From NCBI RefSeq assembly GCF_001194135.2, contig NC_068994.1, forward strand, positions 27,329 to 91,328: a stretch of DNA of 64,000 nt, written 5' to 3'. This document shows, in pieces, positions 41,001 to 55,713 of this stretch (position 1 is the stretch's first letter; every line of letters starts with the position of its first letter). This DNA is from Octopus bimaculoides. Its lineage: Eukaryota. The position numbers were made by a program, and so were the translations under genes. The notes beneath the pieces were generated by a model, which searched no databases, was not told the origin of the DNA, and was given only the letters and a program-made list of their open reading frames with translations.

Positions 41001-43179
41001 TACTTCATCCAACGTGTTCTCCTGATATTGTGCCATCCAACTAACACTTGTTTTTGTCTTTACAGAACTCCTTGCAAGGAAAAACATTTAACAATGTTCT
41101 CTAGATGCATTTTGACTCCATCTAAGATGGAGTCAGAATGCATCCAGATAACGTTTTTTTCTTCAAAACCAGTCAAATTTTATGCTCACGAAATATTTAA
41201 TCCTTTTGTTACCATATTTCTGTTGAAATGTTCTGTGTTTCTTTCAAATACTTTAAATATAACAAAGAATTTAGTAAAATAACTTAGTTATCATAAAGCT
41301 AGTGTTAGGAACATAAATTGTGACTAAGGTTTGGTGGAAGATTTTAATTCAAAACTTAGAAAAACAAAACATTTGTACAACACAGACAGAGGCGGTTTCA
41401 GCCAGGTTGGTTACGAAAGGGTTAAATTGCCTGATAGATAGGCAAAAGTCATTAATAATAAAGGAAAATACTTCATTGAATAAAATTTATTGAAGGATCA
41501 ATTATTTACATCCCTTTTTGCATATTAAAAAATCCTCAGAACTTTCCAAACAACTTAATATGTATATATATATAAGATACAAGGTGTTTTTATCAGGGTG
41601 ACTCCAAACAATAGGTATACACTCTGAGTGCACAAATAGGAGGTATGCCACTAAAATTCTGGTGTGAATGTCAGTTGAAGTTTTGTGACTGCTTATCCAA
41701 AGCAACTAAAAGTGGCTTTCACTTGAGCCAGTAGGGTTAGGGTTAGGGTAAAAAAAGGAGAAGCAAATAATTTGGCAAAACTTGACAAGGACATTGAATT
41801 TAATTTAGCTATATAATGAAAGGTTGAGATTGTCTCTGACAATTGTTTCTGGGATATCCCAGCTACTGGAACATCATATCAAGTGAAAACTCCATCATCA
41901 GAGAGAAATAGGTTAAACATATGTAACAGTGGAATAAAAGTTCATCAGTGATGGTTGTTGTGGTTCATTATGTCCAGAGAAGGAGGAGAGATCCAAAAAC
42001 GTCCAGTTAGATCCATTGAGATTTCGTATTCATTAAGTATTCATGATCAGAGAGAATGGTTAGATATAATCTATACTGAGAGAAGATGAATCTTAGCAGT
42101 TTCAAAGCTGGATAAATTCTAAGAAGAGGAATAAATACAGTACACTCTGGTGGAAGAACGGTAGGATAGACAGGAGTTTGGATCAGGTATATACCAATCA
42201 GTACAGCAAAGGGTACTCCTGTCAAGAGATACACACACACACACACACACACATGCATATATATGGATCTCTCCAGATAGTGTATTGGATGTCTTGTATG
42301 TGTCACTGACACAGGTGTCTTTTACATGTCACTGACGGCACTGGCTATGATCATGATTTCACTTAGTTTGAAGTGTCTTGTTAAGTTGAACAAATCACCA
42401 GAAGTATCAGTCACTTGTCATCACCTGCATGAAACTCAACTACTGAAGATTATACTTCACCATCTCATCCCACATGTTCCTGAGTTTACGTCTTGCACAG
42501 GTTCCCTCCACAATTAGAGATTGTCATTTCTTTATGCAGCTGTCCTCGTCCATATCCATTACATAACCATACTAGTGCAGCTTTCTCTCATGCACACATC
42601 TGATGCCTCTTACACTTAGTTTTTCTCTAAAGGTACACTTTGTTGTATGTGCACACTGACATTGAACATCCAGCAGAGCATGCTAGTTTCATCTCTTTTA
42701 AGCCTTTGCTTGTTTATGATAGTTCTGTTGTCCTGTTGCATGGCTCTTTGCACACAGGCATCATACAGTCTGCCTTTCTCTCTGAGGGAAGGGTCTTTGT
42801 TATCAACAAAGGTAGCATCTCTCTGAATTTTTGCCAGGCCAGTCTTATTCTAGCTGTTATACTCTCAGAACATCCTTTACTACTGTTCTCTCTCTCACAC
42901 ACACACACATAGACATATACAAACAAACTTTTCAACCATGTAGCCATACTGTTTCTCCACACATACAGTTTATATATATTGTGTGTATGCATATAAATAG
43001 CGTATAGCTGAATAAATGTTGCGAGCCAAAAATAATAACAAAATACAAGAGTAAGAAAAGGGATCAAATCTCACCATGTCCTCCAGTTGATTCGAGGCCT
43101 GTGATGTTGAGAGTTTCGATTTTGCCTTGTTTTGTGACTTCTCAGTCTGTGCTGGCATTGAACTTGGTGAACATCCCAT
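1879..43179 (-). CDS. Multi-exon gene (3' part outside window): acylation motif + novel repeats + malectin-like + FBA + DUF4062-like domain; NPHP3/TTC41-like STAND-family N-terminal half
   Basis: 14 GT-AG exons: 43179-43075, 35971-35791, 33983-33756, 31648-30584, 25231-25070, 21503-21361, 18632-18534, 16304-16005, 12874-12704, 11379-11299, 10780-10657, 8948-8833, 2997-2880, 2042-1879. They join in matching phase into a stop-free 3057-nt frame, and domain motifs continue across the junctions. Confidence 0.88.
2880..2997 (-). CDS. Exon 13: linker (SSWLTDGQFQISELDK...)
   Basis: tttttaag acceptor, G|GTAAGG donor, phase 0 to 1. Confidence 0.72.
4254..4495 (-). repeat. 3' LTR (partial) of the Gypsy element
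   Basis: Direct repeat of 7716-7960; ends at the TSD; interrupted by a mariner. Confidence 0.75.
4500..5450 (-). mobile_element. Mariner transposase pseudogene nested in the Gypsy element
   Basis: WVRHEL, VWWSGAGVIHY, LQDNAR, HPPYSSDLALTDY motifs in ORFs 5007-5270 and 4583-4963; ends approximate. Confidence 0.88.
7716..8022 (-). repeat. 5' LTR of the Gypsy element
   Basis: Homologous to 4254-4495; followed by PBS and gag. Confidence 0.8.
8030..8700 (-). pseudogene. Possible highly decayed Gypsy integrase zinc-finger region
   Basis: Stop-riddled frame HVHLIRMKQ..SGISELIEGFCKCSS loosely resembles the H2C2 region. Confidence 0.3.
8833..8948 (-). CDS. Exon 12: FBA C-terminus (GKDDKYWDGHYG)
   Basis: Matches G.D..YW.G.YG; strong polypyrimidine acceptor; donor CTG|GTGCGG. 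Confidence 0.85.
8990..10260 (-). mobile_element. RTE LINE 3' portion with (ATG)n tail
   Basis: GLLYPDDL, LLPLLVTQGLSLRVKGRFYDAC...MLYGS motifs. Confidence 0.8.
10657..10780 (-). CDS. Exon 11: FBA domain (WQEVSVTFSNYGPGVR)
   Basis: Matches the FBA motif W.E.SHTF..Y.PGVR; G|GTAAGA donor. Confidence 0.92.
11299..11379 (-). CDS. Exon 10: FBA domain (VSEWYREGVCGGGFY)
   Basis: Matches V.DWY....CG..Y; caacag acceptor, ACG|GTTCGT donor; 81 nt, too short for the ORF track. Confidence 0.85.
11912..12297 (-). mobile_element. tRNA-derived SINE
   Basis: Head GGAGGCGCAATGGCCCAGTGGTTAGG...GGTTTCGATTCCC with A/B boxes. Confidence 0.85.
12704..12874 (-). CDS. Exon 9: FBA domain (FITSHMRCTKQQEVDL...PDIQ)
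   Basis: Matches FBXO-type F.TS...C.K.Q.VDL...PDI; CAG|GTAAAT donor. Confidence 0.9.
14985..15173. repeat. Palindromic MITE-like hairpin
   Basis: Inner 31-bp near-perfect arms 15035-15103 plus imperfect outer arms. Confidence 0.75.
16005..16304 (-). CDS. Exon 8: malectin-like C-terminus, linker, FBA start (NLLQNASGE)
   Basis: atttcag acceptor, GAG|GTAAGA donor; NLL.N..GE matches the start of FBA domains. Confidence 0.87.
16970..17600 (-). mobile_element. CR1/L2-like LINE ORF2 fragment
   Basis: IKNIKSNPKAFFHYVK and LNDQFKSVFT in ORF 17040-17432. Confidence 0.7.
17640..17880 (+). mobile_element. Tc1/mariner transposase C-terminal fragment
   Basis: Translation PPNSPDLNSIDYYIW...LKATIVQVM. 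Confidence 0.7.
18534..18632 (-). CDS. Exon 7: malectin-like (VSNGNFILRLH...ITVNG)
   Basis: NG.Y.VRLH-like motif; cttcag acceptor, AAG|GTAAGA donor, phase 0 to 0. Confidence 0.85.
20583..20765. mobile_element. Tc1-type MITE in a TA microsatellite
   Basis: TIR-like CAGGGTGGGCCAAAAGT and ACTTTTAGCCCATACTG, flanked by TA. Confidence 0.65.
20820..21330 (+). mobile_element. RTE LINE 3' end
   Basis: EGTCGRGRPRKTW motif, shared 3' UTR and (ATT/ATG)n tail. Confidence 0.7.
21361..21503 (-). CDS. Exon 6: malectin-like (ITGTEDNFLYLTSR)
   Basis: Resembles the malectin I.GT.D..LY.T.R motif; ttttcag acceptor, ACA|GTATGT donor. Confidence 0.85.
21915..24870 (-). mobile_element. RTE LINE, degenerate RT and 3' UTR
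   Basis: ELLYVDDL at about 23790-23815; frameshifted RT; shared RTE 3' end. Confidence 0.78.
25070..25231 (-). CDS. Exon 5: malectin-like N-terminus (VVAINCGGPSY)
   Basis: AINCGG malectin-type motif; tctgtag acceptor, G|GTAAGT donor. Confidence 0.88.
26251..30530 (+). mobile_element. Near full-length REL-endonuclease non-LTR retrotransposon (R4/Dong/HERO-like), inactivated
   Basis: NYRPITCL, WIDYKKAFDS, GIFQGDSL, YTDEL, YKYLG; CCHC-like CHVC..H....C; RPDII...LIDM..P; K..KY..L; (AAT)n at both ends; 5' boundary inferred. Confidence 0.88.
30584..31648 (-). CDS. Exon 4 (1065 nt): repeat units 2-4
   Basis: Lies within the 477-aa ORF; tttaatacag acceptor, A|GTAAGT donor, phase 1 to 1. Confidence 0.9.
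32452..33440 (-). mobile_element. Helitron 3' fragment (PIF1-type helicase C-terminus and CTAG end)
   Basis: RIPLIP...QFPLKLSINKAQWQSL...QLYVRCSRV...TKNVVYQEAL; 3' end GTACATCAGCTAG followed by T. Confidence 0.82.
33455..33712 (+). mobile_element. tRNA-head SINE
   Basis: GGCGTAGTGGTTAAGAGCGCG...GAGTTCGATTCC. Confidence 0.75.
33756..33983 (-). CDS. Exon 3: first novel repeat (GGCCSLVFIS...IFLLRSGFNCNHF)
   Basis: ttttttag acceptor, G|GTAAGT donor, phase 1 to 1, similar to the repeats in exon 4. Confidence 0.88.
35791..35971 (-). CDS. Exon 2: DPLAVDVRRKPF...NQMQD
   Basis: ctacag acceptor, A|GTAAGT donor, open frame, phase 0 to 1. Confidence 0.75.
36420..40720 (+). mobile_element. Penelope-like retroelement remnant, split by a hAT insertion
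   Basis: YRLPKIY, TILMS then FYVSNLYT across the hAT, ANLIIG, LPFLDI, CKTHNLIYCIT. Confidence 0.7.
36842..39597 (+). mobile_element. hAT DNA transposon, degenerate transposase
   Basis: TIRs TAGAGTTGCCAA and TTGGCAACACTG; 8-bp TSD TTATGAGT/TTACAAGT; CRYC..H...KKH zinc finger, CTTRWLS, LTLPNSNA. Confidence 0.88.
40720..41180 (+). mobile_element. Mariner transposase fragment
   Basis: CVWWDHKDITYY, FQQDNTRPH, SPDIVPSN motifs. Confidence 0.78.
42300..42880 (-). mobile_element. RTE LINE 3' fragment
   Basis: FREMLPLLITKTLP...DCMMPVC; homologous to 9270-9790 and 56100-56770. Confidence 0.75.
43075..43179 (-). CDS. Exon 1 (start): MGCSPSSMPAQTEK...QLEDM
   Basis: ATG at 43179, MGCxxS motif, strong donor ATG|GTGAGA, phase 0 matches next exon. 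Confidence 0.75.

Positions 43180-55713: not shown

What the first reader, a model, noticed from the sequence alone, without database searches (positions are those of the whole stretch)
43075..55713. Two complementary half-genes point away from each other across a 100-N gap: probable scaffold inversion splitting one giant gene
Seen: the minus gene has a start but exits the window just after entering DUF4062. The plus segment begins with an internal phase-2 exon only 110 bp after the gap and encodes exactly the region that follows the NTPase in DUF4062-NTPase-TPR proteins. No plus-strand DUF4062 or Walker A exon is visible between 43179 and the gap. The right flank of this gap (45566-45612) is the reverse complement of the repeat end at the left flank of the 7091 gap, so contigs break in a shared repeat. 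Inference: flipping the left block gives a single repeat-malectin-FBA-DUF4062-NTPase-TPR gene. The alternative is two head-to-head paralogs with a large unsequenced gap.
Basis: partly seen in the sequence, partly recalled or inferred. Interest (0 to 1): 0.72.

Follow-up and report, generated by a model that had tools for sequence, protein, structure and literature searches.

The report
One giant octopus gene, mis-scaffolded halves
The two half-genes are the front and back of one conserved ~1950-residue immune-receptor-like gene, and the assembly gap between them is a faulty join (most likely one block is in the wrong orientation), so this is mainly an assembly artefact.

Summary
On the minus strand, 12 clean exons (43179 to 1879) encode the N-terminal part of a protein. 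They run from an MGC start, through ~116-aa repeats, a malectin-like fold and FBA, to the first ~30 residues of DUF4062. On the plus strand, 9 clean exons (45675-54960) encode the helical/TPR C-terminus and start with a phase-2 internal exon 110 bp after the gap.

A full-length intronless transcript from another species (P0051, 1952 aa) maps residues 106-1025 to the minus exons and 1502-1952 to the plus exons. Residues 1026-1501, which include NACHT, are absent from the window on either strand.

The same exons lie on one strand in a gapless clam locus. In Octopus vulgaris (81-92% DNA identity), the exons just before the plus half sit 2.9-4.5 kb upstream on the same strand and splice in frame. 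The window has the gap there, followed by unrelated sequence.

So the join at 45466-45565 is not continuous. The likeliest reading (about 0.7) is a single gene with one block mis-oriented. A paralogue pair with a very large unsequenced gap is not excluded, because the sequence left of the window could not be read.

The gene is a new member of the known DUF4062(NIR)-NACHT-TPR NLR-like class.

The parts
43075..43179 (-). Exon 1 of the 5' half: MGCSPSSMPAQTEKSQNKAKSKLSTSQASNQLEDM. It carries a probable N-myristoylation/palmitoylation signal.
   Evidence: ATG at 43179 and donor GT at 43074-43073. The MG(C) start is conserved in P0051, amphioxus and the starfish Patiria miniata.
33756..33972 (-). 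Exon with the first ~116-aa repeat (matches P0051 residues 106-184). The 5' boundary is approximate.
   Evidence: tblastn 67% identity, E 6e-32; donor placed.
30584..31648 (-). 1065-nt exon holding the further ~116-aa repeats (P0051 178-534).
   Evidence: tblastn E 2e-90; AG/GT; repeat shown by hhalign self-comparison, probability 97.4%.
16005..25231 (-). Four exons (25231-25070, 21503-21361, 18632-18534, 16304-16005) encoding the malectin-like beta-sandwich region (P0051 535-768).
   Evidence: No Pfam malectin hit. Fold match to human malectin 9ikp for the orthologue.
8833..12874 (-). Four exons (12874-12704, 11379-11299, 10780-10657, 8948-8833) encoding the FBA domain.
   Evidence: Pfam FBA 48.7 bits; tblastn to P0051 768-932; collinear homologues in Tegillarca L003 at 1275-2930.
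1879..2042 (-). Exon with the linker end and the first ~30 residues of DUF4062/NIR. It is the last exon of the 5' half inside the window.
45466..45565 (.). The 100-N gap, a faulty or non-continuous join.
   Evidence: O. vulgaris L005 aligns to the window only from 45618 rightwards. Its 9.9 kb upstream, with two exons, has no counterpart in the window.
45566..45612 (+). (GACA)n microsatellite plus CACACATTCTCATTTTTAT at the contig end. An inverted copy lies at 7050-7090.
45675..45759 (+). First visible exon of the 3' half (CDVVRETTSAIWCSRKGMSEDELRKLVN). It is internal and phase 2.
   Evidence: acceptor conserved in Argonauta and O. vulgaris.
47080..54960 (+). Eight further exons (47080-47277, 47758-47895, 48515-48657, 50056-50179, 51512-51631, 52343-52489, 53088-53329, 54792-54960 including the stop) encoding TPR_NPHP3 and TPR_12 repeats.
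   Evidence: Every exon is preceded by AG and every internal donor is GT; the ORF is intact. Pfam TPR_12 E 2e-32 and TPR_NPHP3 E 7e-21. 94% identical to O. vulgaris CAI9733594.1.

Best explanation
The window, from an octopus related to Octopus vulgaris, holds both ends of a single gene of about 1950 codons. The gene encodes, in order: an N-acylation signal, ~116-aa repeats, a malectin-like domain, FBA, DUF4062/NIR (a TIR-like NADase domain), a NACHT NTPase, and helical plus TPR repeats.

The 5' part lies on the minus strand (43179 down to 1879 and on past the left edge). The 3' part lies on the plus strand (45675-54960). The join at the 100-N gap is an assembly error: the two blocks are in the wrong relative orientation. 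The simplest repair is to invert everything left of the gap. Equivalently, the right block could be flipped and moved to the far side. Either repair brings the missing DUF4062/NACHT exons, predicted on the minus strand left of the window, next to the exon at 45675.

Shown:
- the exon structures of both halves;
- their complementarity to a full-length orthologue;
- the absence of NACHT exons from the window;
- non-collinearity with O. vulgaris at the gap.

Inferred:
- that there is only one gene copy;
- that the error is an orientation error.

Inferred function, from the domains only: a STAND/NLR-like switch. Ligand sensing would drive NACHT oligomerisation and activate or scaffold the NIR domain. 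The two lectin-type modules suggest binding of glycans exposed in the cytosol.
For: 1. P0051 (1952 aa) is one uninterrupted ORF on a 6023-nt Logan contig, so it looks like an mRNA. It carries FBA, DUF4062, NACHT and TPR. It maps to the window as residues 106-1025 on the minus strand in order and 1502-1952 on the plus strand in order, with no overlap.
2. Orthologues of 1880-1965 aa with the same architecture exist in amphioxus, starfish, crinoid and sea urchin.
3. In Tegillarca L003 (no Ns), homologues of the minus-strand FBA and DUF4062 exons, 11 further DUF4062/NACHT exon matches (10 of them at E below 1e-4), and homologues of the plus-strand exons all lie on one strand in protein order.
4. 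O. vulgaris L005 (no Ns) aligns with window 45618-56583 at 81-92% identity. It has exons for P0051 1395-1458 and 1448-1497 on the same strand, 4.5 and 2.9 kb upstream. The second splices in frame, phase 2, to the orthologue of the 45675 exon.
5. Neither those exons nor any of that 9.9 kb is in the window. Window 43180-45465 has no match in L005.
6. Both halves have intact ORFs and canonical splice sites, as expected for a working gene rather than the products of an old break.
7. Order and strand are consistent across the gaps at 7091, 16817 and 32054. Flipping only 7191-45465 would break the FBA-to-DUF4062 order.
Against: - The sequence left of the window was not available, so the predicted minus-strand NACHT exons were not seen.
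- No reads, Hi-C data or transcripts from this species were available.
- Copy number in octopus is unknown. Sea urchin has extra TPR-only relatives, so paralogues are possible.
- The 5' half could not be located in O. vulgaris or Argonauta, so collinearity within a cephalopod genome is shown only for the last NACHT-side exons plus the TPR part.
- The species that P0051 comes from is unknown.
Confidence: 0.7

Rival explanations
1. There are two head-to-head paralogues. The minus gene has its own NACHT-TPR part left of the window. The plus gene's whole 5' part (repeats, FBA, DUF4062, NACHT) lies in unsequenced DNA hidden by the 100-N gap.
For: It is not excluded by anything in the window. NLR-like families often expand, and sea urchin has additional shorter relatives. 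The O. vulgaris comparison shows that sequence is missing at the gap in any case.
Against: The gap would have to hide the equivalent of the 41 kb that the 5' half occupies here plus the NACHT exons, several tens of kb at least and probably more, while the other copy assembled well. Full-length orthologues appear as single ~1950-aa genes in several phyla. The searches returned only one relative from O. vulgaris and one from Argonauta, although clustering at 50% identity could hide more.
Confidence: 0.15
2. The join is a wider misassembly rather than a simple inversion. The NACHT-bearing contig is unplaced or elsewhere in the scaffold, and the two blocks were brought together through repeats at the contig ends.
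For: Contig ends sit in a microsatellite and repeat shared with the 7091 gap. SINE-like copies flank the gap in inverted orientation (44856-44991 and 46112-46247).
Against: A random misjoin would rarely place the two halves of one gene next to each other. Adjacency with wrong orientation is the simpler error. The SINE copies are only 78% alike.
Confidence: 0.1
3. A real inversion in this species has split the gene into a lectin-NIR(-NACHT) gene and a separate TPR-only gene.
For: The present orientation is what the assembly reports. The gene models in O. vulgaris and Argonauta also begin at this same exon.
Against: Those models are annotation truncations. The splice acceptor is conserved, and in O. 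vulgaris the upstream exon is present and joins in frame. The breakpoint coincides exactly with an assembly gap inside a microsatellite. The plus half has no start codon of its own before the internal Met.
Confidence: 0.04

Closest known systems
Uncharacterised ~1900-1965-aa orthologues: Branchiostoma belcheri LOC109471895 (XP_019626894.1), Patiria miniata LOC119740704 (XP_038072011.1, named 'FBA domain-containing protein' in UniProt), Strongylocentrotus purpuratus LOC576310, Anneissia japonica LOC117111194, and the Logan transcript P0051
   Same: Same length class and same domain order: MG start, repeats, malectin-like region, FBA, DUF4062, NACHT, TPR_NPHP3 and TPR_12. They are 38-59% identical over the TPR part.
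   Different: Those are whole gene models or transcripts. Here the gene is in two diverging pieces with the NACHT third missing. None of them has a tested function.
NIR (DUF4062)-NACHT-repeat NLR-like proteins of animals (NPHP3, TTC41, NWD1/2, TEP1) and bacterial Avs2-type NIR-STAND-TPR defence proteins
   Same: DUF4062 sits next to a NACHT/STAND NTPase with C-terminal repeats, and there is a Pfam TPR_NPHP3 match. DUF4062 is a TIR-like NADase in bacteria and in human TEP1, and is widespread in metazoan NLR-like proteins (bioRxiv 10.64898/2026.05.01.722283 and 10.64898/2026.09.04.749371).
   Different: Here about 1000 residues (repeats, malectin-like region, FBA) precede DUF4062, whereas the preprints describe the domain as usually at the N-terminus. 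Neither preprint's main text mentions FBA, F-box or lectin. NADase activity was not found for NPHP3 or NWD1/2 in those studies, so activity cannot be assumed here.
FBA domain of F-box proteins (FBXO2/FBXO6 type)
   Same: Pfam PF04300 matches above the cut-off.
   Different: Pfam found no F-box domain next to it in the orthologues. That the domain binds glycans is taken from general knowledge of the family and was not tested.
Orientation or misjoin errors at scaffold gaps in short-read or proximity-ligation assemblies
   Same: A gene's exons switch strand exactly at an N gap whose flank is a microsatellite, and a related contiguous genome is collinear only on one side of the gap.
   Different: The error type is inferred here. 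It has not been demonstrated with reads.

Membership tests
DUF4062(NIR)-NACHT-TPR NLR-like proteins | DUF4062/NIR domain | tested here: inconclusive
   Only the first ~30 residues lie in the window (exon 2042-1879). Pfam gives 18.2 bits against a cut-off of 24.7. My own profile gives E 4e-8. Orthologue P0051 scores 48.8 bits over residues 1000-1085.
DUF4062(NIR)-NACHT-TPR NLR-like proteins | NACHT/STAND P-loop NTPase (Walker A/B) | tested here: not met
   No NACHT exon on either strand of the window. The same profile finds these exons in Tegillarca. NACHT is present in orthologues and is therefore presumed to lie outside the window.
DUF4062(NIR)-NACHT-TPR NLR-like proteins | C-terminal helical and TPR repeats of NPHP3 type | tested here: met
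   TPR_12 E 2e-32, TPR_NPHP3 E 7e-21, TPR_10 E 7e-14 on the spliced plus-strand product.
DUF4062(NIR)-NACHT-TPR NLR-like proteins | Catalytic glutamate of the NIR NADase | not testable with these tools
   The exon that would carry it is not in the window. I did not place the residue in the orthologues either.
FBA (PF04300) | Match to the family profile above the curated cut-off | tested here: met
   48.7 bits against 32.4 on the concatenated exons; 103 bits in P0051.
Malectin / malectin-like domain | Sequence match to the Pfam malectin families | tested here: not met
   No hit at E up to 0.05 in the window's ORFs, none at E up to 0.01 in three orthologues, and no malectin among PDB profile hits.
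Malectin / malectin-like domain | Malectin-type beta-sandwich fold | tested here: inconclusive
   The model of P0051 535-715 has pLDDT 70 and pTM 0.74. Its best PDB match is human malectin 9ikp (E 3.6e-5, TM 0.51), followed by CBM35/CBM6 and plant malectin-like ectodomains. This was done on the orthologue, which is 58% identical to the window's region.
Scaffold orientation error | Sequence on the two sides of the gap is not contiguous in an independent related genome | tested here: met
Scaffold orientation error | The missing exons lie at the far end of the block to be flipped | not testable with these tools
   The sequence left of position 1 could not be obtained.
Scaffold orientation error | Reads, Hi-C contacts or transcripts support the corrected orientation | not testable with these tools
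   No data from this species were reachable. An exact look-up of the exon-1 ORF found nothing.

The most novel reading that the evidence does not exclude
The gene belongs to an uncharacterised, bilaterian-wide family of about 1950 residues. In it, an N-acylated protein couples two lectin-type modules (malectin-like plus FBA) and a novel ~116-aa repeat to a TIR-like NIR NADase through a NACHT switch and TPR repeats. That would make it a cytosolic glycan-sensing, NLR-like immune or damage receptor that nobody has studied. It is mis-annotated as fragments in at least three mollusc genomes (O. vulgaris, Argonauta, Tegillarca).
Probability: 0.3. Interest if true: 0.6.

Novelty: new member of a known kind. 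Interest (0 to 1): 0.3.

Why it matters
For this genome, the join at 45466-45565 should be flagged. Gene models made from it will be truncated, and the same gene is already split or truncated in the public annotations of O. vulgaris (196 aa), Argonauta hians (462 aa) and Tegillarca granosa (three models).

For biology, the corrected gene adds a cephalopod member to the DUF4062/NIR NLR-like proteins. That class has just been linked to NAD+ hydrolysis in bacterial immunity and in human TEP1. This member has an unusual lectin-rich N-terminal extension that is conserved from molluscs to amphioxus.

Tried and rejected
- Word-indexed protein searches with the FBA/DUF4062 exons and with a clam NACHT segment found no cephalopod protein, so Argonauta could not be walked upstream that way.
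- The 10 kb upstream of the Argonauta model holds no NACHT exon and no homologue of the minus gene. It contains a 4.6-kb tandem repeat, so it was uninformative.
- The Logan contig of P0008 comes from an unrelated low-GC organism.
- An exact look-up of the exon-1 ORF, meant to find reads or contigs of the same species, found nothing.
- A paper search for run SRR27666071, to name the species behind P0051, found nothing.
- A single-sequence AlphaFold model of the 1065-nt exon was useless (pLDDT 33).
- I rejected inversion of only the piece between the two 100-N gaps (7191-45465). It would separate FBA from DUF4062, which are consecutive in every orthologue.
- I rejected the shared gap-flank repeat as evidence for orientation. 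It is 41 nt, the two copies diverge straight afterwards, and they cannot be the same locus.
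Full report
**What the window is.** The window has 36% G+C, spliced genes, many transposon fragments and five N runs. The plus-strand product is 94% identical to Octopus vulgaris CAI9733594.1. The flanking DNA aligns with the O. vulgaris chromosome OX597827.1 at 81-92% identity. The window is therefore from an octopus related to, but distinct from, O. 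vulgaris.

**The minus-strand half.** An ATG at 43179 opens MGCSPSS...EDM, with a GT donor at 43074. Using the full-length homologue P0051 as a guide, I placed the following exons:
- about 33972-33756
- 31648-30584
- 25231-25070
- 21503-21361
- 18632-18534
- 16304-16005
- 12874-12704
- 11379-11299
- 10780-10657
- 8948-8833

Every exon whose boundaries could be placed has AG/GT (the 5' end of the first is only approximate), and together they give 826 residues without a stop. Exon 2042-1879 then encodes the end of a linker and the first ~30 residues of DUF4062. The phases of exons 8948-8833 and 2042-1879 do not fit each other. At least one small linker exon is therefore unrecognised or lies in the 7091-7190 gap. 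Nothing further of the gene is found in the remaining 1.9 kb to the left edge.

**The plus-strand half.** Nine exons are each preceded by AG, and all eight internal donors are GT: 45675-45759, 47080-47277, 47758-47895, 48515-48657, 50056-50179, 51512-51631, 52343-52489, 53088-53329 and 54792-54960. They splice to 1366 nt. The first base completes a codon begun elsewhere. The product is 454 residues (CDVVRETTSAIWC...VLVNSN) ending in a stop. It matches TPR_NPHP3 and TPR_12. The first exon starts 110 bp after the gap and has no usable start codon, so it is an internal exon. The acceptor and the exon are conserved in Argonauta hians and in O. vulgaris, and similarity drops just upstream of the AG.

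**What is missing.** I searched the whole window on both strands in three ways: tblastn with clam and bacterial relatives, a 524-position profile of DUF4062-NACHT that I built from 45 homologues, and tblastn with P0051. All three find only the one DUF4062 exon. The same profile picks up 11 consecutive DUF4062/NACHT exons at E below 1e-4 in the clam locus, so the negative result is meaningful. No such exon lies between 43179 and the gap.

**One gene elsewhere.** An unindexed HMMER search returned proteins of 1880-1965 residues with the TPR match at their C-terminus. They are:
- P0051, from a Logan contig of run SRR27666071. The contig is 6023 nt with one uninterrupted ORF, so it is transcript-like.
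- Predicted proteins of Branchiostoma belcheri, Patiria miniata, Anneissia japonica and Strongylocentrotus purpuratus.

All of those tested carry FBA, DUF4062, NACHT, TPR_NPHP3 and TPR_12 in that order.

P0051 maps to the window as residues 106-1025 on the minus strand in order, and residues 1502-1952 on the plus strand in order. There is no overlap, and residues 1026-1501 are absent.

In Tegillarca granosa (L003, no Ns), everything lies on one strand in protein order. This includes homologues of the window's FBA and DUF4062 exons, the NACHT exons, and homologues of all but one of the plus-strand exons (the one at 48515-48657 was not picked up). The locus is annotated there as three separate models.

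**The gap itself.** O. vulgaris L005 (35.4 kb, no Ns) is collinear with window 45618-56583. Upstream of that point it carries exons for P0051 1395-1458 and 1448-1497 on the same strand. The second ends ...DEFGD plus 2 nt before gtgagt. It joins the orthologue of the 45675 exon in frame, 2.86 kb away. None of that 9.9 kb is anywhere in the window. Window 43180-45465 matches nothing in L005 except a SINE-like element. The letters on the two sides of 45466-45565 are therefore not continuous in the sense of a ~100-bp hole. Either a great deal of sequence is missing there, or the join is wrong.

**The shared flank.** The right flank of this gap and the left flank of the 7091 gap share about 41 nt in inverted orientation. 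The shared stretch is a (CAGA)n microsatellite plus a 19-mer found nowhere else in the window, and the two copies then diverge. This explains why contigs end there. It does not bear on orientation.

**Weighing the explanations.** One gene with a wrong relative orientation of the two blocks explains several things with no missing tens of kilobases:
- the adjacency of the two halves;
- their exact complementarity;
- the intact reading frames on both sides;
- the coincidence of the strand switch with a gap.

Order and strand are consistent across the other three gaps. Flipping only 7191-45465 would break the FBA-to-DUF4062 order. The unit that is wrong is therefore everything left of the gap relative to everything right of it.

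A head-to-head paralogue pair needs a duplication and also a gap hiding the whole 5' two-thirds of one copy. It is not excluded, because I could not read the scaffold left of the window and had no reads from this species. A real inversion is unlikely, since the breakpoint sits exactly at an assembly gap and the plus half has no start of its own. My estimates are 0.7 for one gene with an assembly error, 0.15 for paralogues, 0.1 for a more complex misjoin and 0.04 for a real inversion.

**What the gene is.** It is a STAND/NLR-like protein of the DUF4062(NIR)-NACHT-TPR kind. Two 2026 preprints show that DUF4062 is a TIR-like NADase in bacterial defence systems and in human TEP1. They also show that it is widespread in metazoan NLR-like proteins, usually at the N-terminus. 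NPHP3, NWD1 and NWD2 showed no activity under the conditions tested.

Here the domain is preceded by about 1000 residues:
- a conserved MG(C) start, which is a probable acylation signal;
- tandem ~116-residue repeats with no Pfam match (hhalign self-match probability 97.4%);
- a region whose AlphaFold model best matches human malectin and CBM35/6 modules, although sequence profiles do not detect malectin;
- an FBA domain.

The likely mode of action is inferred from the domains only. Ligand binding would lead to NACHT-driven oligomerisation and then to activation or scaffolding of the NIR domain. The lectin-type modules point to glycans as ligands or as a localisation cue.

**Verdict.** The gene is a new member of a known kind. 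The finding is chiefly an assembly and annotation problem.

Noticed in passing
window 30584-33972 (-); P0051 residues ~107-450: The N-terminal region of this family consists of tandem ~116-residue repeats with no Pfam match. They are conserved from molluscs to amphioxus and echinoderms (hhalign self-match probability 97.4%, E 1e-11).
   Followed up: partly
window 1879-8948 (-), including the gap at 7091-7190: The last FBA exon ends in phase 0, but the DUF4062 exon starts with two bases of a split codon. At least one small linker exon is unrecognised or lost in the 7091 gap. This intron is packed with transposon remains: mariner Transposase_1 at 4586-5011 and RVT_1 at 5557-5967.
   Followed up: partly
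L005 (O. vulgaris OX597827.1:84052749-84088193), L001 (Argonauta hians BAAFZT010000037.1), L003 (Tegillarca granosa CM056606.1): Public gene models of this gene are truncated or split. O. vulgaris CAI9733594.1 is 196 aa, starts at an internal Met and skips exons. Argonauta Ahia01_000724800 is 462 aa with a start codon placed in the intron. Tegillarca has three adjacent same-strand models of 1300, 539 and 204 aa.
   Followed up: yes
window 43075-43179 (-): The MGCSPSS start matches MGCSASQ (P0051), MGCGTSH (amphioxus) and MGTKVSK (starfish). This is a conserved Gly2 (plus Cys3) motif typical of N-myristoylated or palmitoylated proteins.
   Followed up: no
window 44856-44991 and 46112-46247; also 49885-49981: SINE-like copies lie in inverted orientation on both sides of the gap (78% complementary). 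Related copies are present in the O. vulgaris locus (L005 about 19240-19430 and 28895-29104).
   Followed up: no
L001 2879-7543: A 4.6-kb tandem repeat that reads as (PTPTLT)n in one frame sits in the intron upstream of the Argonauta orthologue's first recognised exon.
   Followed up: no
window 60718-61945 (+): Two overlapping long ORFs (208 and 234 aa) have no Pfam match. They are probably part of an unclassified mobile element.
   Followed up: partly
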